Assembly (NCBI GenBank): GCA_000320545.1
Contig: ADNK01000540.1
Location: 1-42,166, forward strand
DNA from: Bigelowiella natans CCMP2755
Lineage: Eukaryota; Protista; Cercozoa
Length of the DNA: 42,166 nucleotides
Reading direction: 5' to 3'
The notes under the pieces were generated by a model. That model was not told where the DNA came from and ran no database searches. It saw only the letters and a program-made list of their open reading frames with translations. The position numbers and the translations under genes are program-made. Shown here in pieces: positions 15,997-28,637 of the stretch; the stretch's first letter is position 1, and each line of letters starts with the position of its first letter.

Positions 15997-16413
15997 GCAA
16001 AAAATGGATCGGAGGCTTCCAGGGGCTTCGTGGGCGACAGCGGTTCTCTTTCTAAACAAACGCAGCTGCCCTCCTCGTTTTATTCTTTCCCCCGATTTCT
16101 CCTCCTCCTCCTCCTCCTCCTCCACCACCACCACCTCCTTCGCCACCTCAGTCCTCCTCTCCAATTTGATCCGCCTGGGGCGACAATCTCCTTCCTATCC
16201 CGCTCCGCCAGCTTTTTGCAGTGATCCGGAGGGGGAATGGGGGGCGGTCAAGGTGCTATGGTGCTCTTCCGAGATATGCGCTGGAGATTCTCGAGGATTC
16301 TCTCAGAAACACGAGCGGTTACTACCGGTCGGGCCTGGAGAGGCGCGAATTCACCTAGAAACATCGGCGATTTTTTTCCTAGCTGCCCAAACGGAATTTT
16401 TAGGATTTTTAAG
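15997..16413 (+). repeat. Direct repeat copy 1 (~415 bp; probable duplicated promoter region)
   Basis: Aligns with 22263-22671. It starts gcaaaaaatggatcg and includes the (cct)n(cca)n tract. The core 16267-16413 differs from 22525-22671 at only ~4 positions. Confidence 0.92.
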
Positions 16414-17439
16414 GGGGCGTTAACTAATGAACAACGGTTACGGGATCGGATCGCATCACATCACCAAGCGCTTTCCCTTCCACCTGTAGTAGCTCTGAAG
16501 TTAATCAAGCGATGAGCAACAAAGGGAAGGTCGACCTAAACAACCTAGGTGATTATGTCATCGACACCAGCGCACTCGAGGTATGTAGCCACTAAGAAAT
16601 CAGTGAACGATAAAGACATTTCGTCGTTGAGGTTAGACCTCGTTGCATGGGGGAGAGAAGGAGCACAGCGCTGCTTTAATTACAGCCCGAACAAAGAAAA
16701 ACACACAGCCCTTTACACACTGCTTATATACCTCATTCATACAATTTAGGATGTCAGTGACACAAGTGATGCGAAGTCATCGGTAATTCCATGGCCACAA
16801 TGCTGAAAGGTGTTCGTAGTGGTACACTGATACTGGATTCTTTCTTTCAACTGATTCAGAGTCAGGTAGCCATGCCAAGTCTGGAGCCTGATCCTAGCTC
16901 TGCCGTGAAACCCGGTACGGCTGCAGTGATATCGGCGCAACAATGGCCTACTACGTCGACTGGAGGACAAGAGAGTTCTCAGCAACAGCGACAGCTACAA
17001 GCTAGTAGAAAACGTCAAAAGGTAGATCCACAACCTGCTGGGCGAAATACTACTCGAAATAGAAGCCTCACGTCCACAGCTTCATCAGGTTACATCATCG
17101 AACAAAAATATGATGATTGCCCTATGTGATTACTCGCTCACATCTGTTCTCGTTTCGCAGGGAGGGGGGCAGCAGGACCTTCTAGTTCAATGGAGGCTGC
17201 CTTGGTGTTACCACCGCATTTATTCTATTGATAATTTAAAGATCTTGGCAAGTTCTCTAAACCAATGTTATCTGATGAATAAATATACTCTTTTTTACAG
17301 AAATTCTTGTTCGATTACTCGCAATTACGTATCGACGCCCGATACAAAGAATACATGAAGAAAACATCGTCCGTAATCAGGAACAGCCTCCCGAGTAATG
17401 TCCTAGCATGCGTTGCTATTGCTACCCACATTTTTATTT

Positions 17440-17486
<47 letters not shown>

Positions 17487-17540
17487 GCCAAGCAGACTCG
17501 TTGTTAATATTATTGCTAATTAGGAACCCAGAGGGAAATC

Positions 17541-20500
17541 ATGTGGCGGAAACAAAGTAGAGCGAAGCCAAAAACTGAGCTTGGCAGCACCTCTCTTATT
17601 TCAGCAAGTCAGAACGGCCAAACCGACATGGCAAATCTCCTGGTCAAGAAGGGGGTTGAACTTGAGGCAAAAATCAAGGAGGGCTGGACTTTAATGATGG
17701 CAAGTCGTCATGGCCACACCGACATCGCAAAGCTCTTGCTCGAGAAGGGGGCTAAACTTGAGGCCAAAAACAAGAATGGCTGGACCCCTCTAATTTGCGC
17801 AAGTCATCATGGCCGCACCGATGTTGCAAAGCTCTTGATCGAGAGGGGGGCCAAACTTGAGGCTAACAACAAGGATGGCTACACCCCTCTAATGTTGGCG
17901 AGTCGTCATGGCCACACCGACATCGCAAAGCTCTTGCTCGAGAAGGGGGCTAAACTTGAGGCTAACAATAAGGATGGCTGGACCCCTCTAATTTACGCAA
18001 GTCATCATGGCCGCACCGATGTTGCAAAGCTCTTGATCGAGAAGGGGGCTGAACTTGAGGCAAAACACAAGAATGGCTTCACGCCTCTAATGTCAGCAAG
18101 TCGGTATGGCCACACCGATGTTGCAAAGCTCTTGATCGAGAAGGGGGCTGAACTTGAGGCAAAATGCAAGGATGGCTTCACGCCTCTAATGTCAGCAAGT
18201 CGGTATGGCCACACCGATGTTGCAAAGCTCTTGATCGAGAAGGGGGCTGAACTTGAGGCAAAATGCAAGAATGGCTTCACGCCTCTAAAGTCAGCAAGTC
18301 GGTATGGCCACACCGATGTTGCAAAGCTCTTGATCGAGAAGGAGGCAAAATGCAAGAATGGCTTCACGCCTCTAATGTCAGCAAGTCGGTATGGCCACAC
18401 CGATGTTGCAAAGCTCTTGATCGAGAAGGGGGCTGAACTTGAGGCAAAATGCAAGGATGGCTTCACGCCTCTAATGTCAGCAAGTCAGTGTGGCCACATC
18501 GATGTTGCAAAGCTCTTGATCGAGAAGGGGGCTGAACTTGAGGCCAAATCCAAGGATGGCATCACGTCTCTAATGCTAGCAAGTTGTCATGGACGCACGA
18601 ACACTGCAAAGCTCTTGATCGAGAAGGGGGCTGAACTTGAGGCAAAATGCAAGAATGGCTTCACGCCTCTAATGACAGCAAGTCGGTGTGGCCACACCGA
18701 TGTTGCAAAGCTCTTGATCGAGAAGGGGGCTGAACTTGAGGCAAAATGCAAGAATGGCTTCACGCCTCTAATGTCAGCAAGTCGGCATGGCCACACCGAT
18801 GTTGCAAAGCTCTTGATCGAGAAGGGGGCTAAACTTGAGGCAAAACACAAGGATGGCTGGACCCCTCTGATGTTGGCAAGTCGGTATGGCCACACCGATG
18901 TTGCAAAGCTCTTGATCGAGAAGGGGGCTGAACTTGAGGCAAAATGCAAGGATGGCTTCACGCCTCTAATGTCAGCAAGTCGGCATGGCCGCACCGATGT
19001 TGCAAGGCTCTTAATCGAGAAGGGGGCTAAACCTGGGGCGAGATGTTCTGCAGCAAAGACAGCCTTGAATTGGGCACAGGAATCCCGCAATCAAGACATG
19101 GTGAAACTTTTGGAACAGCATGTCGCCGTTTGTGAATCAATGGAGTCGGATTCCAAGCAACATCCTAAAAAGGAGATTGCACACAGACCAAAGTCAATGC
19201 CACCAAAGTCTGGTAAAAAGAGAGCAGAAGCACGTACAGCTGGAGAGTCTCTCGTTGCTAGACCCAGCAAAAAGGTCATTATTTCGAATGGTGCTTGCAA
19301 AATTTGCGAACAAATGGGATCATAAATGTGCTACTGCTGCTGTGTCAGGCAAAATTCGGATCAGGTGAAGAGAGCAAGGGGAAGAAATATGAGGAATTTG
19401 AACAGTTTCTCAAAAATGCCCATCTCTCTGAATACTCCCAAACGTTGCGTCGCGATGGTTATGAGTTCCTCCAGGACTTAATCGACATGGTAATATTTAT
19501 GGTCTAGGTATGTAGGGTAGTTCTGGATGTAATATTTAGCATTCTTCCTATTGTTGTAACATCTTAGGAGAGTGACGAAATTGAGAAATACTTTCCGAAA
19601 AAACCGCACCGTAGAAGGTTCAAAAAGGCGATCAAGGAAAAGAAAAAGACCACCTCAACGAAACCCAGCAAAATGCCGAAGCCTGTCGTTGACCACAAGT
19701 TTGCATTAATTATTGGTAATGGAAACTATAGTACTGGTCCATTGGGATTAAACCCTATCAATGATGCCCAAGTTGTAAGAGAAAAATTTGAAAGTGAGTA
19801 CGGCTACAAGGTCTTCTATCATGAAAACCTGGAATGTAAAGAAATGAATGAGGCTCTTAATGAATTTGAAGATGCTCTCTCCCAAGAGACAGGCAAATCC
19901 CTGGCAGTTGTATTTTTCGCCGGCCATGGGGTCCAAATAACAACTAATAAGGGCGTGGTCGAGAATTTGCTACTGGGCATTGATAACGTCTACAAGAATG
20001 AAACTGAAAGGTAGAGAGGTTACTGGCTCTTCGATTGTCATTCAAGTAACTTCATCTTCTTGTTGCAGGCAAATGCAAAGGAAAGAAATAAGTACCAAAA
20101 AAGTAGTCGAAGCCTTAGAGGCAGCAGACGTCTCGATAAAAATCATGTTACTGGATTGTTGTCGTAATGTTTCAGGTATTCCAATCCATGAGTCATCAAA
20201 CACCTGTCTAACAACACAGCCACAATTTGCTATTACATTAGGACTGCCACGTTTCATGGCAAGTAAGACTCGTTCAATAACGAGAAGTGGTTTCGCAAGA
20301 GAAGAGTTAGAAGGATGCATGATACTCTACGCTTGTCAACCAGGTGAATTCATATTTGAGAACGCAAAAAGATTCTTCGGGCCAAAGAACACATTTGATC
20401 TGTGTGTGTCATTCAAATGTCAGGCGAGGAAGCTCTAAATGGGGACAGCAAGAACGGACTGTTCACCAAGTCGTTGATGGAAGCCTTTGAAAGCCAGAGG

Positions 20501-20665
20501 AATGAGAGGAATTCTCCAAGATTCAGCGATCTCGTCAAAGAAGCTGAGAAAATCATGAAAGATCGAAATCAGCATCCTGCTGTTGAAATTCCGTGCATGG
20601 GCGATTGCAATGACATCTGCATCGATGGAACCCTCTTCAAACACTGGTATCAGACTCTGCTGTAG
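17541..20665 (+). CDS. Ankyrin-repeat / SAM / caspase-family (peptidase C14, para/orthocaspase-like) fusion protein, spliced
   Basis: Exons joined in frame by GT-AG introns: 17541-~19274 (15 ankyrin repeats + cap); 19349-19489 (FEQFLKNAHLSEYSQTLRRDGYEFLQDLIDM); 19568-20010 (ESDEIEKYFPKKPHRRRFKKAI completing a SAM-like domain, then KFALIIGNGNY..NPINDA..VVFFAGHG); 20069-20175 (KIMLLDCCR); 20242-20343 (MILYACQP); 20424-20665 (GEEALNGDSKNGLFTKSLM..QHP). Possible extra 5' exons from ~16513 could not be joined cleanly. Confidence 0.88.
17680..19036 (+). repeat. 99-bp coding tandem repeat array (ankyrin), high internal DNA identity
   Basis: The unit ...ggcttcacgcctctaatgtcagcaagtcggtatggccacaccgatgttgcaaagctcttgatcgagaagggggctgaacttgaggcaaaatgcaag.. 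recurs with few substitutions. One unit has an in-frame 12-bp deletion at ~18341. Confidence 0.97.
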
Positions 20666-21169
20666 CTGAAACGGAAGTGATGTAAGAGCCTTCAACATTG
20701 TCTTGTTGACGCGCGAAAGAAACAAGTCACGGACGCATTCTGATTCATTCTGTTCGCGAGAAAACAATGGACAAATTCATCGAATGTCTCGAATGTGAAA
20801 AGAGTTTTCATGGTGTGCACATCTGCATGCACACACATGTGAATTGACAGACACAGTGCGGTGTGCAGCTACGTCATGGCGTCTCATCTCACGTCGCATG
20901 AAGGCATACTAGCGTGCGCGCCACATGGCAACGGTGATGGCATAGGGACACATGTGTCCCGCCCTGCAATGAAGCGGGTAGCAGTGATGCTGACATGGCA
21001 GCAACATGGTTTTCGCAGTGGTTGCCTTGCATTCAGCGTGGTTGCAACAGTCTAGCAGTGCTGGTTTCTCCATTCCCAGCAACACAGCAATGATCATCCA
21101 CAATTGTTGTGGTTGCCACAGAGTGATCATTTGCAATTGTTGCGAGGCGGCAGCCATGCATGTGCATCA

Positions 21170-21316
21170 CACATGAGGGAATGGAAACAGACTCACTGTG
21201 CAAGTTCGAAAGACGGAAATCTCGAACCACATCCAGATGCACCTTTCACGATGAAGGATGTCGTTGTGATGTTTTTCCGCGTTGCTTCCGATCTCCTCAT
21301 CCTCAAGTTGGCGCAT
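21170..21316 (-). pseudogene. Degenerate inverted copy of part of the downstream coiled-coil gene (23098-23231)
   Basis: Reverse complement atgcgccaacttgaggatgaggagatcggaag...cacaacgacatccttcatcgtgaaaggtgcat...ccgtctttcga...gtgagtctgtttccattccctcatgtg aligns to atacgccaacttgaggataaggagatcggaag...tacaacgacttcctctatcgtgaaaggtgcat...ccgtctttcga...gtaaatctgtttctattccttatgtg, with indels. Confidence 0.85.
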
Positions 21317-22262: not shown

Positions 22263-22671
22263 GCAAAAAATGGATCGAAGGCTCACAGGGGCTCACGTTG
22301 CTTTCCAAACGCTAGCAGCTGAGCCTCCAATTGCTGCCCTCACATCTGGACATCCTCGTTCCATTCTTTCCCCCCGATTCCTCCTCCTCCTCCACCACCA
22401 CCACCATCTCCTTCGTGACCTAAATCCTCCTCTCCATGTTGTTCCGCTTGGGGGTGACAATCTGCTTTCCATCCCGCTTCACCAGCTTTTTGCAATGATC
22501 CAGAGGGGACAGGGTGCTGCAGTGTTCCGAGATGTGCGCTGGAGATTCTCGAGGATTCTCTAAGAAACACGAGCGGTTGCTACCGGTCGGGCCTGGAGAG
22601 GCGCGAATTCACCTAGAAACATCGGCGATTTTTTTCCTAGCTGCCCAAACGGAATTTTTAGGAATTTTAAG
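22263..22671 (+). repeat. Direct repeat copy 2
   Basis: See copy 1. It lies ~100 bp upstream of the ATG at 22768. Confidence 0.92.
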
Positions 22672-24069: not shown

Positions 24070-26797
24070 CTACCTTCTGTCAGCCCTTGTCGCGTTCGGC
24101 CTTGCCTTACCTCTCTCATGATCGCGCGATAATAGCATAAGCATCTCGAAATGGAGTGTTTGAGGGAACAGATCGAATGGCCGCGTTCTGATAACCTTGA
24201 AGGGAACACCGATTAGTTTTTTAGTGCAAGGTTGAACCATCTTTTTCACGTCCTCCATCATTGATTTCGCGTTGCAGGAGACGTAGACCAGATACTTCAC
24301 TCTTTCGCAATTCCGAAGAGCTTCGATTACCTTGGGATGTAACCCCCCCCGTGGCGGGTCTACGACGGCGATGATGTCCCCCTCCGTCTGCTTAGACACA
24401 GACTCCATCACTTCCTTGATCGTCTCCTCACCTTCCCGACATAATATTTCACATTGTCAATTTTATTGATCTCAGCGTTCCGTTTCGCATCCTCGATCGC
24501 TTCTGCCACGATCTCCAACCCGTAGATCATTTTAGCACTCTTGGCGAGCAACAAGCCGATGGCACCTGTCCCGCAACAAACGTCTAGTATCACAGGCGGC
24601 GAGGAAGCCATTGTACTACTTCCCGTGGAGGAGTCTTTCGCATCGCTCTTCAAGGTGGGAACGGGTTGTTCAGTTTCAACAACTTCACCGTCCGCTCCTT
24701 CCTCCTCTTTTTTCTCGTCGGGATAGGGGACGGGGTTAGAAACCCAATCTCTCACTGTTTCGAATAGGCATTCCGCTGCCTTCGCGTTGATTTGGAAGAA
24801 GGCCTCAGGAGAGACGCAAAACCGGACGCCAAGCAGAGATTCATGGAAATTTCCAGGACCAAAAATAACTTCGGTCTTCGAGTCACAATTCACCTCAAAT
24901 CTAGTTTCGTTGTACTGGATGAGAGCCGAAACTATGCGATAACACGATCTGCTGCTCTCCTCATCGCCGCCATTGCTGCTGGCTGTACCGCTGCTTTGTT
25001 CAATCTCTTTATCATTACTACCACCGTCATCATTACCCTTCTTTGTAGCAGCAGCAGCCCACCCTTCGTTGAGCTGCTCACATACCTGAAGCAACCCGTT
25101 CCGTATTGCATCCAGCTCACTTTTCTGCAAACCCTCAGATTTTATTTGCACGACAACAAGAGCCTCTTTGGTGCTCTGCGAGTTGCGGACCATGACCTGC
25201 CTGAAAACCCCCTCGCCTATGATGCGATCGTAGCACTTGTGCTTTAGAGACGTCGAGCGCATGAATGCCGTCATTCTTTCCGCAACCTCGATTGCCACCC
25301 TCGGGACATGTGTGCACAAGGATGGATCGGCGACATTGGCGCAGCCGCTACCGATTTCACCCAGCTTTTCATCCCCATCCTTCACTCTCTCCCTGATCGA
25401 GCCGACCGTGAATCCAAACATAGGCTGCCCGGTGAGGACGTCCGTTCCTGCAGTGAACTCGCACTTGTTTCGATAGCCCTCCAACGCAGGGGAGGGACAT
25501 ATCTTTTCTACCACGGAGAGTCTCCCTCCCCCCATAGGCCTTTTCCCTCCGTCGAATTTCCAGTACCTTCACACAAAATACCAGAAAAGGAAGTGTTGGG
25601 GTTGTTTTTACTTGCTCTAAGCCCAGTCACTCTATTTTGTTACTACTTACAGTTTTGTCAGTTGCCGAGCCAGTCTCTTAATATGACTGCGGGCTTCGAT
25701 GTCCTTGAGTCTCAGCTGCTCTTCATACGGAACGCGCCAGTACGGGGTTGTGACGTTCCTTGCATTTCGAGCGCGTCTGAGCTTAGTTTGGATAACTTCA
25801 TCCGATGACTTCTTCTCAGTTGATTCTGCAGCTGAGACTGTTGCCAGAGAAGGCCTCTCCCCCCCCTCTTTTTTGTTGAGGGCTACCAGGAGCTCTCCAG
25901 CAGACTGGGCAAAAACTGTGCCGAGGCGCCTTTGCCGTGAACCTGTACCGTTGTTCTGGAAAAAGTCAATCTCTGCTGCCATCCTGCTGTTTTCCATCGA
26001 CGGCCGGAAAAGGCAGTCACCCGAGGTCACAGTTCCAGATGTAGAGTACAGTATCCACCGTTTCCCCTTATCCTACAGAGAATAATAACATCTTCAGAAC
26101 CAACTTGTGTGTTGTCGTCAGTCTAGTTGGAAATAATATATGAAAAGAAAGAAACTCTGCGGAACCTTGACTTGGACGAGAGCATCCTTGCAGCCTGTGA
26201 GACTACATGTTCCTCCTCCGCTGATACGGCCAACGTTCTCCCAAAAGCCCTCGACGTTTAGCGTTTGACTTCTCCTCTTGACAGCTCGCCCGTCATCTTG
26301 CTCACGTTTTCTCTTTCGCTGCAAATCTTTCGCATTGATCTGGCGACATTGCATTCGGCCTCGTTCGTACTTTTTACCATCCAATGCTTCGAAAGCAGCT
26401 TCTTTCGACTCTCGATCCTACGTTGGTGTTCAAAAAATATCGCCGACACGAATAATACTGAGGGTTTTTCGCAACACATTTGGTAAGAGTTCAGACCTTG
26501 AACGTGAAAATTCCCCACGTCTGATTCTTGTGCTTTGTGATTTGGGAGATTCCAGCAATTTTCAAAGTGCCCACCATGTAAGCTTGAACCTAGGTAAAGA
26601 CAAGTTGCATCGAATCACACAAGAATTCACAACGATCCAACGAATCGACGGGCTGGCTGAACAACCCGCTTGGAGTTGTAGAACTTTGGCAAATTCTCAA
26701 CGACGAACGAAACAGGCTGCACATCCTTCACTTCCGCATCATTGTTCTGCGGCGTGGTAGAGCCACTGGCAGCCCCTGCATTAAGAGTCGTCGTCAT
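24070..26797 (-). CDS. TRMT2A: tRNA (uracil-5-)-methyltransferase TRM2/TRMT2A homologue, spliced
   Basis: N-terminal RRM-like FVVENLPKF; VTTPYWRVPYEEQLRLK; GYRNKCEFT; FCVSPEAFFQIN; SAM-binding ILDVCCGTGAIGL; AVVDPPRGGLH; LVYVSCN; PFDLFPQTLHFEM. Confidence 0.93.
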
Positions 26798-27291: not shown

Positions 27292-28637
27292 ATGAGCCAC
27301 GTTCGTGTCAATGGGTTCCAGCGTCCAGCAACAACACAGCAGATCCTGGCGTTTGCTCTAGTTTTAAGTTCTACAGTTATTGCATGCGGTCTAGTGTTCC
27401 CTTTTGCACCTGAAGGTTTTGAGCAGGACTTCATCACCACCATATATTTTGGTTTATTTGGGGTCGGATTCGCCTGTATGCTCTACACGGAGATGGTGGA
27501 CCCCGTCCGCGAGCAAGCACAGAACGTGTCCACTCTAGATAGCAATAGGCTTGTATGTCAATACTGCGACAATGAGAAGGAAATGAAGAATACAACAAAG
27601 GTAGTAGTAGTAGTAGTAGTAGTAGTAAATAGTAAATGGCAGTAGGAATCTTGTTGTCTGAGCTCATTATTTCCGATTTTTTGGTTTTTCTCTACCCTTC
27701 TCAGCACTGCCACCTTTGTAACAAGTGCGTCTCCCACTTCGACCACCACTGCATCTACCTCAACACCTGCATCGGGGCACGGAATTACTGGACGTTCTTC
27801 GGTCTCATCACATCGATAGTCGTCCTGCAGATCATTCATATCGTCTACCAAATATCATTAATCGTCCGTGTGGCAAACGACAACGACGGTGTGATTGACC
27901 GTGTTGATAGCTCCGCCCTGTCAAACACGGCCTACATGGTTGTGTCGGGAATATCGCTGTTATTTCCCGTTGTCGTGCTGGCAGCAGTCGGTTCACTGCT
28001 AGGCTTTCATATATACATCAAAGTCATAGGTAAAGATGCTGTGCTCCGCCCCGCCCCTATCTTTTTCTCTCTCTTCTTCTTTTTCCTTCTCTTCCTGCTC
28101 TTGTTCCTTTTCTTCTTCTTCTTCTTCTTCTTCTTCTTCACATCCCCTCAGTCTCGTACCCTAACCACCTGACGTAACCCCCCACACAATCTACACATAT
28201 CTGAAGAGAGGGCATCATCCTGCCGTGTGCGCTTGGCATTGATGACAATATACAGGGACCACAACCTTCCTCTGGATCAAAGCAAAGAGGAGAATGCGGC
28301 TGGAGCGCCAAAAGCAGGAGAACGAGGTGAAGAGGCAGCAGGAGCAAACGGCGGCGGAAGAGCGCAACAAGATCGCCTCGGAGCGAGAGAGGAGTGAAGA
28401 AAAGAAGAATCTTGCAGAGCGATACGTTACGGACGTTACCAAAGTTTCTGAGGGAACGACGAAGGTTTCTTTCTCTATGCACCTGTCATCGTCGTGCGTG
28501 TTGTTCTCTGTGCGTTAGGAGCTAGCAAAACTGAATCATGATGCTATTCCTTTCACTTCCGGCTTTCTAGACCGGCACCTTCACAAAGCTTACCGATTCT
28601 TGTTTTATTGTTTTTTAATTGCAGCCGATCCAGAAAG

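What the first reader, a model, noticed from the sequence alone, without database searches (positions are those of the whole stretch)
17541..20665. ANK-SAM-caspase fusion: candidate protist innate-immune / regulated-cell-death receptor
Seen: five short GT-AG introns join, in one frame, an ankyrin array, a SAM-like domain (split across exons 19349-19489 and 19568-~19635) and a complete caspase-fold domain with both catalytic motifs (FAGHG, LLDCCR) and the C-terminal YACQPG..A...NGLFT motifs. The ORF track shows these only as unrelated fragments. Known: the ALIIGN.NY / NP.NDA / FAGHG / D.CR pattern is typical of bacterial orthocaspases and paracaspases rather than type I/II metacaspases, SAM domains oligomerise, and repeat-SAM-effector is the logic of SARM1 (ARM-SAM-TIR). 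Inference: ankyrins bind a ligand, SAM assembly clusters the protease domains, and proximity activates proteolysis or cell death. I do not recall this architecture being characterised.
Basis: partly seen in the sequence, partly recalled or inferred. Interest (0 to 1): 0.9.

Follow-up and report, generated by a model that had tools for sequence, protein, structure and literature searches.

The report
Ankyrin-SAM-caspase fusion gene in an alga
The alga Bigelowiella natans transcribes a six-exon gene that joins a long ankyrin-repeat array, a SAM domain and a bacterial-type caspase-like protease in one protein, a domain combination I found described nowhere, whose role in defence or cell death is still only a guess.

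Summary
Window 17541-20665 (+), from Bigelowiella natans, carries a six-exon, 922-codon gene. It encodes about 15 ankyrin repeats, a SAM domain split by intron 2, and a complete C14 caspase-fold domain with its His and Cys intact.

- **Splicing:** all five GT-AG introns are spliced out in cDNA contigs. Introns 3-5 are seen in three studies, introns 1-2 in one. A poly(A) tail starts near 20784.
- **Annotation:** the public JGI model (Bigna1 69701, 298 aa) holds only exons 3-6.
- **SAM:** supported by profile hits to solved SAM domains and by a paralogue model that matches only SAM domains.
- **Protease:** the nearest solved structure is the MALT1 paracaspase. The nearest sequences are bacterial "caspase family" proteins (30-40% identity), none with ANK or SAM.
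- **Family:** six paralogues form one clade and share intron positions. One paralogue's cDNA contig joins ANK exons to SAM-caspase.

The proposed mechanism is inference: ANK targeting, SAM clustering, an Arg/Lys-specific protease, and a role in immunity or cell death. Tankyrase (ANK-SAM-PARP) is a closer architectural analogue than SARM1.

I rate it a new variant of a known kind. The scan had earlier noted a different SAM-CHAT-NB-ARC protein elsewhere in this genome, not this family.

The parts
17541..19274 (+). Exon 1: start codon, ankyrin array and a basic low-complexity tail (578 codons, ends in phase 0)
   Evidence: ORF. Pfam Ank_2 2e-137 and Ank 1e-133 with 15 stretches. In-frame TAA at 17517 upstream.
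17593..19039 (+). Ankyrin array: 14.8 tandem units of 99 nt at 86% match. One unit is 87 nt (12-nt deletion near 18271).
   Evidence: Variable residues sit at repeat positions 4, 7, 8, 13, 23, 28, 30 and 32. pN/pS is 1.10 there against 0.28 in the framework.
19275..19348 (+). Intron 1 (74 nt, GT..AG). It holds the TAA at 19323-19325 that ends the ANK-only ORF if the intron is retained.
   Evidence: Skipped in a cDNA contig of run X1, 22 nt on the short side.
19349..19489 (+). Exon 2: N-terminal half of the SAM domain (47 codons)
   Evidence: A profile of 8 paralogous copies hits the SAMSN1 SAM domain (1v38_A) at 5.4e-6.
19490..19567 (+). Intron 2 (78 nt, GT..AG), splitting the SAM domain
   Evidence: Skipped in X1. 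Same position in the paralogues.
19568..20010 (+). Exon 3: C-terminal SAM helices (to about 19642), a basic linker, and the first half of the C14 domain with ALIIGNGNY, NPINDA and FAGHG
   Evidence: Pfam Peptidase_C14 1.5e-15, model positions 2-101. Motif coordinates. Full SAM profile A3 hits SAM domains in the PDB.
19925..19927 (+). Codon of the predicted catalytic histidine (H of FAGHG)
   Evidence: Aligns with the His of YAGHG in MALT1. Nearly invariant in alignment A2.
20011..20068 (+). Intron 3 (58 nt, GT..AG)
   Evidence: Skipped in contigs of X1, X5 and X14.
20069..20175 (+). Exon 4: strand and loop with LLDCCR
   Evidence: Present in P0001 residues 150-184.
20160..20162 (+). Codon of the predicted catalytic cysteine (second C of DCCR)
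   Evidence: Aligns with the Cys of LLDMCR in MALT1. D, C and R are nearly invariant in A2.
20176..20241 (+). Intron 4 (66 nt, GT..AG). It is in frame and has no stop, so retention would add 22 residues just after the catalytic Cys.
   Evidence: Skipped in X1, X5 and X14.
20242..20343 (+). Exon 5: Arg/Lys-rich loop and strand with YACQPG
   Evidence: The equivalent loop in the paralogue model has low confidence (pLDDT 49-67).
20344..20423 (+). Intron 5 (80 nt, GT..AG)
   Evidence: Skipped in X1, X5 and X14.
20424..20665 (+). Exon 6: C-terminal part of the caspase fold (NGLFT helix to the end) and stop codon
   Evidence: Weak alone (C14 E 0.13, model positions 173-224). In P0001 the whole domain scores 2e-27 over model positions 2-223 of 233.
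20666..20854 (+). 3' untranslated region. One contig carries a poly(A) run after 20784; others reach 20848-20854.
   Evidence: tables 7 and 8. Raw RNA-seq reads of X21 pile up at 20454-20850 with the first mate on the + strand.

Best explanation
This is a nuclear gene of the chlorarachniophyte alga Bigelowiella natans. It encodes a cytosolic protein of about 922 residues in this order: roughly 15 ankyrin repeats, a basic linker, a SAM domain, a second basic linker, and a complete C14 (caspase-haemoglobinase fold) cysteine protease of the bacterial orthocaspase / paracaspase-like kind.

Shown:
- the exon structure and its splicing in RNA;
- the three domains;
- an intact His-Cys dyad;
- membership of a Bigelowiella-specific family of six paralogues that share the SAM-protease core and its intron positions, and that carry ankyrin exons upstream.

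Inferred:
- The ankyrin solenoid, whose few variable residues lie mostly on the usual binding face, selects protein partners or substrates.
- The SAM domain brings several copies together, or docks them on a partner.
- The resulting proximity dimerises and activates the protease, as in MALT1 and the initiator caspases.
- The protease cuts after Arg/Lys, because two of the acidic S1-pocket residues of MALT1 are conserved.
- The fast-evolving, recently expanded family fits stress, defence or cell-death signalling better than housekeeping.

My odds: architecture 0.9, active Arg/Lys protease 0.6, SAM-driven clustering as the switch 0.4, immune or cell-death role 0.3.
For: - **Gene model and RNA:**
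- **Organism and public fragment model:** Bigna1 69701.
- **ANK:**. Array homogeneity. Variable positions with pN/pS 1.10 against 0.28 in the framework.
- **SAM:** the exon-2 profile hits the SAMSN1 SAM at 5.4e-6. The full-domain profile hits SAMSN1, SHIP2/EphA2, Caskin-1 and SAMD5 SAM domains. The AF2 model of the paralogue SAM has five helices and pLDDT 84. Every listed Foldseek PDB hit is a SAM domain, with TM 0.62-0.77.
- **Protease:** Peptidase_C14 at 2e-27 over nearly the full model on P0001. phmmer against the PDB finds only MALT1, with the catalytic His and Cys and the NDA and LLD aspartates aligned. The paralogue model has pLDDT 82, and its best Foldseek hit is MALT1 at 9e-13. The ESM Atlas neighbours are all bacterial caspase family proteins at rmsd 2.4-3.4 A.
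- **Family:** the six strongest Peptidase_C14 loci in the genome are these paralogues. Exon order is the same. They form one clade with SH-aLRT 100. dS is 0.2-0.6 and dN/dS 0.35-0.99.
- **Independent paralogue evidence:** cDNA contig L018 of paralogue C1996 runs from ANK exons through SAM to the caspase end. The genome copy is in frame there.
Against: - The exon 1 to exon 2 join in this gene rests on one run with a 22-nt overhang, and the 5' end was not observed.
- Pfam's own SAM models stay below their cut-offs: 17-18 bits against 23-25 on paralogues, and nothing on exon 2 alone.
- The SAM and caspase structure models are of paralogue P0003, not of this gene.
- The third acidic S1 position is Asn in all six paralogues. 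It is Asp in most bacterial relatives, so specificity is uncertain.
- Nothing here tests binding, oligomerisation, activity or phenotype.
- dN/dS near 1 in exon 6 for some pairs could equally mean relaxed constraint.
- One paralogue (C2601, P0152) has Asn at the catalytic Cys position.
Confidence: 0.6

Rival explanations
1. Tankyrase-like logic without any death or immune role. The ankyrins recruit particular substrates, the SAM builds a polymeric scaffold, and the protease carries out limited, regulatory cleavage in ordinary signalling or protein turnover.
For: The domain order ANK-SAM-enzyme is that of tankyrase, where the ankyrin clusters bind substrates and SAM polymerisation activates catalysis (PMC4980433, PMC9712121; found). 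MALT1, the nearest solved structure, is a signalling protease rather than an executioner. The gene is expressed in many ordinary culture transcriptomes at even, moderate depth. Its neighbours are ordinary genes.
Against: Lineage-specific expansion, swapping of the N-terminal modules and high dN/dS are unusual for a conserved regulatory enzyme. No orthologue was found outside Bigelowiella in 1.8 billion representatives.
Confidence: 0.3
2. The SAM domain is not a self-assembly module. It docks on a different partner (a heterotypic SAM, RNA or lipid), and activation of the protease does not depend on clustering.
For: The best SAM matches are adaptor-type SAMs that form dimers or heterodimers (SAMSN1, SLy1, EphA2/SHIP2). 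The last SAM helix and the linker after it are strongly basic. From my own knowledge, RNA-binding SAM domains of the Smaug/Vts1 type use such a basic surface.
Against: This SAM subtype occurs in the genome only next to this protease family, with no separate partner protein carrying it apart from a truncated tandem copy on C1688. That favours homotypic use.
Confidence: 0.2
3. The locus mainly makes separate products, and the fusion is a minor form. The products would be an ANK-only protein (intron 1 retained, stop at 19323-19325) and a caspase-only protein like the JGI model.
For: The JGI model Bigna1 69701 starts at the last codon of exon 2. Runs X5 and X14 show no contig over exon 2. The joins of introns 1 and 2 are seen in one run only.
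Against: - In X1 the depth is even (about 38-43) from the exon-1 tail through exon 2 to the 3' end, and both joins sit at the predicted GT..AG sites.
- Holes in contig data prove nothing (stated).
- An independent cDNA contig of paralogue C1996 carries ANK, SAM and caspase together.
- The tail-SAM-protease exon order is conserved in four paralogues.
Confidence: 0.1
4. The family consists of recently duplicated, decaying genes under little constraint. This copy is transcribed but has no maintained function.
For: dN/dS reaches 0.8-1.0 for some exon-6 pairs. There are partial copies on C1432 and C1688. One paralogue has lost the catalytic Cys.
Against: This copy keeps an open 922-codon frame across six exons, both catalytic residues and correct splicing. 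Exon-3 dN/dS is 0.35-0.54 in most pairs. The ankyrin framework positions have pN/pS 0.28.
Confidence: 0.07

Closest known systems
MALT1 paracaspase (human and mouse; PDB 3v4o, 8v4x and others)
   Same: It is the nearest solved structure by both sequence (E 4.6e-4) and fold (Foldseek 9e-13, TM 0.75 on the caspase-only chain). The catalytic His and Cys align. So do the aspartates that I recall as D365 and D462 of the Arg-binding S1 pocket. From the literature as I recall it, MALT1 is activated by dimerisation on an oligomeric scaffold.
   Different: Only about 19% identity. There is no death domain and no flanking Ig domains. Here the N-terminal part is ANK plus SAM. The third S1 acidic position is Asn.
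Bacterial orthocaspases / 'caspase family proteins', and the 'metacaspase-like proteases' of phytoplankton (Choi and Berges 2013, PMC3734836)
   Same: These are the closest sequence relatives (30-40% identity) and the closest predicted structures (all bacterial). They share the motif set (GN..Y, NP.NDA, AGHG, D.CR). They also share a single-chain caspase fold without a metacaspase-type p10 or prodomain. Like them, the protease is fused to repeat modules.
   Different: This is a eukaryotic gene with five spliceosomal introns. Among the relatives whose partner domains I looked at, the partners were TPR, Sel1, MORN, WD40, PEGA, FGE-sulfatase, PG-binding and GUN4, never ANK or SAM. Many of those relatives carry signal peptides, and this protein has none. 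The nearest curated bacterial model (caspase, EACC1-associated type) scores 52 bits against a cut-off of 140.
Tankyrase 1/2 (ANK clusters - SAM - PARP)
   Same: The domain order is the same: ankyrin array, SAM, C-terminal enzyme. In tankyrase the ankyrins recruit substrates and SAM polymerisation activates the enzyme (PMC4980433, PMC9712121).
   Different: The enzyme here is a cysteine protease, not a PARP. There is no sequence relationship beyond the generic domains. Polymerisation of this SAM is untested.
SARM1 (ARM - tandem SAM - TIR)
   Same: SARM1 SAM domains appear among the structural matches (ranks 29 and 48).
   Different: SARM1 has ARM rather than ANK repeats, two SAMs that form an octameric ring, and a TIR NADase effector. 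The SARM1 SAMs rank well below adaptor-type SAMs as matches.
Type I/II/III metacaspases
   Same: Same C14 superfamily and fold. AtMC4, AtMC9 and GSU0716 appear further down the Foldseek list.
   Different: No metacaspase appears in the sequence search of the PDB at E 0.01 or below. Pfam finds no prodomain, zinc finger or metacaspase p10. Choi and Berges (PMC3734836) reported that B. natans has neither type I nor type III metacaspases.

Membership tests
Peptidase C14 (caspase-haemoglobinase fold) | Match to Pfam PF00656 above the gathering score | tested here: met
   Exon 3 alone scores 57.9 bits against 21.4. The public spliced model P0001 scores 96.8 bits over model positions 2-223 of 233.
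Peptidase C14 (caspase-haemoglobinase fold) | Catalytic His-Cys dyad in the conserved motifs | tested here: met
   FAGHG at 19916-19930 and LLDCCR at 20148-20165. Both align with the MALT1 dyad and are nearly invariant in A2.
Peptidase C14 (caspase-haemoglobinase fold) | Caspase fold in three dimensions | tested here: met
   Tested on paralogue P0003 (72% identical in exon 3). pLDDT above 90 over most of the domain. Foldseek gives MALT1 9e-13, caspase-9 and CED-3.
Orthocaspase (prokaryotic p10-less caspase homologue) | Closest relatives are bacterial caspase family proteins | tested here: met
   The named hits are Bradyrhizobium, Mesorhizobium, Caulobacteraceae and Electrothrix. All Atlas neighbour clusters are 100% Bacteria.
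Orthocaspase (prokaryotic p10-less caspase homologue) | Encoded by a prokaryote | tested here: not met
   It is a nuclear gene with five spliced GT-AG introns in Bigelowiella natans. For a eukaryote the fitting label is 'metacaspase-like protease' in the sense of PMC3734836.
Orthocaspase (prokaryotic p10-less caspase homologue) | Cleavage after Arg/Lys | not testable with these tools
   Only indirect evidence. Two of three acidic S1 positions are conserved, and the third is Asn.
Paracaspase (MALT1 type) | Death domain and Ig domains around the protease (type I paracaspase) | tested here: not met
   Pfam finds only Ank families and Peptidase_C14 in the exons and in P0001.
Paracaspase (MALT1 type) | Groups with paracaspases in a C14 phylogeny | not tested
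   No reference paracaspase, caspase or metacaspase sequences were available by id for the tree. The tree holds only this family and its nearest hits.
Metacaspase types I-III | Metacaspase p10 region, with a prodomain (type I), a long linker (type II) or an N-terminal p10 (type III) | tested here: not met
   No such domain in Pfam. No metacaspase in the PDB sequence search. Metacaspases rank below MALT1 and the caspases by fold.
SAM domain | Match to Pfam SAM_1 / SAM_2 above the gathering score | tested here: not met
   Exon 2 alone gives no hit. Paralogues score 17-18 bits for SAM_1 or SAM_TNK against cut-offs of 23-25, though over the full model length.
SAM domain | Profile similarity to solved SAM domains | tested here: met
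   Exon-2 profile: SAMSN1 at 5.4e-6. Full profile: SAMSN1 at 2.4e-5, then SHIP2/EphA2, Caskin-1, SAMD5 and EphA2 SAMs.
SAM domain | Five-helix SAM fold | tested here: met
   Tested on the paralogue segment P0003:36-108. It has five helices and pLDDT 84. All listed Foldseek hits are SAM domains, with TM 0.62-0.77 and rmsd 1.1-2.8 A over the single-domain matches.
SAM domain | Homotypic oligomerisation | not testable with these tools
   Needs solution biophysics on the expressed domain.
Ankyrin repeat proteins | Tandem 33-residue repeats matching the Pfam Ank families | tested here: met
   Ank_2 2e-137 and Ank 1e-133 in 15 stretches. Tandem period of 99 nt, 14.8 copies.
NLR / STAND immune receptors | Central NB-ARC or NACHT NTPase | tested here: not met
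   No NTPase domain in any exon or paralogue protein.
EACC1-associated caspase (bacterial conflict system, NCBIfam NF047832) | Score above the curated cut-off | tested here: not met
   It is the best NCBIfam hit but scores 52.5 bits against a cut-off of 140.

The most novel reading that the evidence does not exclude
Bigelowiella natans, which has no type I or III metacaspases, built a small innate-defence or regulated-death receptor family of its own. It used a protease domain of bacterial type. Variable ankyrin arrays would recognise a pathogen or danger protein. A family-specific SAM domain would polymerise the bound receptors. The clustered orthocaspase-like domains would activate each other and cut cellular targets. 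That would be an NTPase-free route to a caspase-type response in a rhizarian alga.
Probability: 0.2. Interest if true: 0.8.

Novelty: new variant of a known kind. Interest (0 to 1): 0.55.

Why it matters
Caspase-fold proteases drive cell death and immune signalling in animals, plants and fungi. Little is known about how they are controlled in most protist lineages. The six members of this family are the strongest Peptidase_C14 matches in the B. natans genome. The alga was reported to have neither type I nor type III metacaspases (PMC3734836).

The family couples a bacterial-type protease to two classic eukaryotic interaction modules, in an order known from tankyrase but not from any protease I could find. 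That gives a concrete, testable model for proximity-controlled proteolysis outside animals. It is also an example of a protease of bacterial type being rewired with eukaryotic adaptor domains.

On the practical side, the public gene model is a fragment. Surveys of domain architecture would therefore have missed the fusion.

Tried and rejected
**Joined protein not used.** Exons were searched one by one by reference. The public model P0001, returned by a search, happens to equal spliced exons 3-6 and was used by its id.

**Searches and jobs that gave nothing:**
- The search for homologous proteins with the exon-1 tail (residues 495-578) found nothing. No database protein of 318-1011 aa carries that tail.
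- The search for related loci on alignment A2 failed for lack of a conserved stretch. No named prokaryotic loci were fetched.
- The listing of cluster members on the ten nearest non-Bigelowiella hits gave only unnamed metagenomic records.
- Complex prediction on two copies of the paralogue SAM segment gave no verdict. That is not evidence either way.
- Rfam found nothing in the window.
- The language-model Atlas search gave only generic caspase clusters.
- Literature searches for ankyrin or SAM together with orthocaspase, metacaspase, paracaspase or Peptidase_C14 found no description of this architecture. The 'SAM domain' hits in PMC7159879 are radical-SAM enzymes.

**Ideas considered and rejected:**
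- A viral or transposon cassette. The neighbours are a methyltransferase and a DHHC palmitoyltransferase. The flanking direct repeat has only these two copies in the genome. The gene has spliceosomal introns.
- An NLR-type receptor. There is no NTPase domain.
- A type I/II/III metacaspase. See the membership test.
Full report
**What is in the sequence.** Reading 17000-21200 with the ORF list gives one frame-consistent gene on the + strand. Its exons are 17541-19274, 19349-19489, 19568-20010, 20069-20175, 20242-20343 and 20424-20665. The five introns are 74, 78, 58, 66 and 80 nt long. All are GT..AG and lower in GC (32-41%) than the window's bulk composition (43-55%). The exon phases fit, and the coding length is 2769 nt, or 922 codons plus the TAG. 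An in-frame TAA at 17517 lies just upstream of the ATG. Every search used single exons by reference, or public proteins returned by the searches.

**RNA evidence.** The sequencing-run index returned 20 runs that hold all or part of 19040-20900, four of them with half or more of its sampled words. I laid four runs on 18900-21100.
- Contigs of 801-849 nt from three studies (X1, X5, X14) skip exactly introns 3, 4 and 5.
- A 172-nt contig in X1 carries all of exon 2, with 22 nt of exon 1 on one side. It therefore skips intron 1.
- A second X1 contig shows the intron 2 join, again with 22 nt on the short side.
- Depth in X1 is even (38-43) from the exon-1 tail to the 3' end.
- One contig ends in a poly(A) run after 20784.
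- Raw RNA-seq reads of X21 lie at the 3' end with the first mate on the + strand.

The weak points are that the exon 1 to exon 2 join rests on one run with a short overhang, and that the 5' end was not seen.

**Organism and public annotation.** The exhaustive protein search with exon 3 and the word-based search show the source to be Bigelowiella natans (JGI Bigna1). The 100% hit P0001 is model Bigna1 69701, 298 aa long. It contains the translations of exons 3, 4, 5 and 6 in order, with the split codons read as predicted. It starts at the Met that ends exon 2. The public catalogue therefore holds only the protease part. No database protein of 318-1011 aa carries the exon-1 tail.

**The three domains.**
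- **Ankyrin.** Pfam Ank_2 scores 2e-137 with 15 Ank stretches. At DNA level the array is 14.8 units of 99 nt at 86% match, with one 87-nt unit. Across 12 in-register repeats, 25 of 33 positions are almost fixed. The variable ones are positions 4, 7, 8, 13, 23, 28, 30 and 32. pN/pS is 1.10 at these positions against 0.28 in the framework. As I recall designed ankyrin proteins, positions 7, 8, 30 and 32 correspond to randomised target-binding positions. That agrees with a binding surface but does not prove one.
- **SAM.** Exon 2 alone has no Pfam hit. A profile of the eight paralogous exon-2 copies hits the SAM domain of SAMSN1 at 5.4e-6. A profile of the whole domain from five paralogue proteins hits SAMSN1, SHIP2/EphA2, Caskin-1, SAMD5 and EphA2 SAM domains. 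The AlphaFold model of the paralogue segment P0003:36-108 has five helices and pLDDT 84. Every listed Foldseek match in the PDB is a SAM domain, with TM 0.62-0.77. Pfam SAM_1 and SAM_TNK align end to end on the paralogues but stay below their cut-offs.
- **Protease.** P0001 scores 2e-27 for Peptidase_C14 over model positions 2-223 of 233. The catalytic His (codon 19925-19927) and Cys (codon 20160-20162) are present.

**What kind of caspase homologue.** By sequence, the only solved relatives at E 0.01 or below are MALT1 paracaspase chains. The alignment pairs the His and Cys, the Asp of NPINDA and the Asp of LLDCCR with MALT1 residues. I recall those two aspartates as D365 and D462 of the Arg-binding pocket.

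The model of paralogue P0003 (pLDDT 82) matches MALT1 best (9e-13). Next come caspase-9, CED-3, caspase-7 and caspase-3, then GSU0716 and the Arabidopsis metacaspases. In the ESM Atlas, all neighbouring clusters are bacterial caspase family proteins at rmsd 2.4-3.4 A.

The nearest sequences outside Bigelowiella are 30-40% identical. Most are unnamed metagenomic proteins; the named ones are bacterial. Several have signal peptides or tandem protease domains. Their partner domains are TPR, Sel1, MORN, PEGA, WD40, GUN4, PG-binding and FGE-sulfatase, never Ank or SAM. The best NCBIfam model, the EACC1-associated caspase of bacterial conflict systems, scores far below its cut-off.

Because the gene is eukaryotic, the fitting label is 'metacaspase-like protease' in the sense of Choi and Berges (PMC3734836). 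They also reported that B. natans lacks type I and type III metacaspases.

**The family.** Exon 3 finds five further complete loci in the 91-Mb assembly (C1331, C1996, C891, C2601, C2135), plus partial copies on C1432 and C1688. The six strongest Peptidase_C14 matches in the genome are these loci.
- Four paralogues keep the order tail, SAM exon, and exons 3 to 6 with similar spacing. C2135 lacks a detectable tail, and C2601 lacks both the tail and the SAM exon.
- This SAM subtype occurs only beside this protease family.
- Ankyrin exons lie upstream on the same strand. C1996 has one repeat per exon and C2601 has a long array; single repeat-coding frames were seen in C1331 and C891. None was found upstream of C2135.
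- An independent transcriptome contig (L018, JGI sample 3300017095) of paralogue C1996 runs through spliced ankyrin exons, a Rho_N/SAP-like segment, the tail, the SAM and the whole protease. It differs from the genome by one extra T, and the genome copy is in frame there.
- In a tree of 238 C14 domains, the six Bigelowiella domains form one clade (SH-aLRT 100). Its sister group is unresolved.
- Between paralogues, dS is 0.2-0.6 and dN/dS is 0.35-0.99. The family is young and evolving fast.
- Paralogue C2601 (P0152) has Asn at the catalytic Cys position.

**How it most likely works.** What is shown is one mRNA and one reading frame, three domains, and an intact catalytic dyad. The rest is inference.
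- The ankyrin solenoid probably selects protein partners.
- The SAM probably brings copies together or docks them on a partner.
- Proximity probably activates the protease by dimerisation, as in MALT1 and the initiator caspases.
- Cleavage is probably after Arg/Lys. The third pocket position is Asn in the whole family, which leaves this open.
- The Arg/Lys-rich, poorly modelled loop after the catalytic Cys (exon 5; pLDDT 49-67) is a candidate self-cleavage site.
- Intron 4, which is 66 nt, in frame and stop-free, would lengthen that loop by 22 residues if retained.

The closest architectural analogue is tankyrase (ANK-SAM-PARP). There the ankyrins recruit substrates and SAM polymerisation activates catalysis (PMC4980433, PMC9712121). 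This makes a substrate-recruiting, non-immune reading a serious rival. An immune or cell-death role is suggested only by the lineage-specific expansion, the swapping of N-terminal modules, the fast evolution and the bacterial affinities of the domain.

**Novelty and verdict.** I found no paper or database protein with ANK-SAM-C14. Each domain is ordinary, and fusions of repeat modules to orthocaspases are common in bacteria. I therefore rate this a new variant of a known kind, with moderate to high interest. That hints that SAM may be a recurring adaptor next to caspase-fold proteases in this alga, but I did not test it.

Noticed in passing
window 16000-16420 and 22353-22671: A direct repeat of about 340-410 nt brackets the gene 6.3 kb apart. 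It is 84% identical overall, and the last 147 nt are 97% identical. These are the only two copies in the genome, so it is a local duplication and not a transposon family.
   Followed up: partly
window 17446-17483: A perfect (TC)19 microsatellite lies about 60 nt upstream of the start codon.
   Followed up: no
window 18271-18369: One ankyrin unit is 87 nt instead of 99 nt. It has lost four residues of the loop (LIEK-EAKC), which shortens one repeat in the middle of the array.
   Followed up: no
window 20176-20241: Intron 4 is 66 nt, in frame and free of stops. If retained it would insert 22 residues right after the catalytic Cys. All three runs show it spliced out.
   Followed up: partly
G000:C2601 (L014 6304-7388; protein P0152): This paralogue reads DCNR where the others read DCCR, so the catalytic Cys position is Asn. 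It also lacks the family's SAM exon and carries an unrelated stretch of about 300 residues before the protease. It may be a pseudo-protease.
   Followed up: no
G000:C1688 (L017 4312-5107, minus strand): The tail exon is followed by two tandem copies of the SAM exon pair (exon 2 plus the start of exon 3, intron start included). No protease exons follow. This looks like a truncated or rearranged family member.
   Followed up: no
L018 position about 505 against L012 about 4130: The transcriptome contig of paralogue C1996 has one extra T relative to the genome. That splits its reading frame, while the genome copy is in frame. It is either a strain difference or an assembly error.
   Followed up: yes
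Paralogue proteins P0002, P0004, P0151, P0153 (N-terminal parts): A short Rho_N/SAP-like segment (Pfam Rho_N E 3.5e-4 to 1e-3, below the cut-off) sits before the SAM in several paralogues. The window's gene does not have it.
   Followed up: no
L012 6127-8965 and L013 5353-5622: In paralogue C1996 the ankyrin repeats are coded one per exon, with introns of a few hundred nt between them; one such frame was also seen in C891. The window's array is a single intron-less, homogenised block.
   Followed up: partly
window 24408-25532 (-) and 27636-28169 (+): Nearby ORFs encode a SAM-dependent methyltransferase domain and a DHHC palmitoyltransferase domain. These are ordinary eukaryotic genes with no viral hallmarks.
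   Followed up: partly
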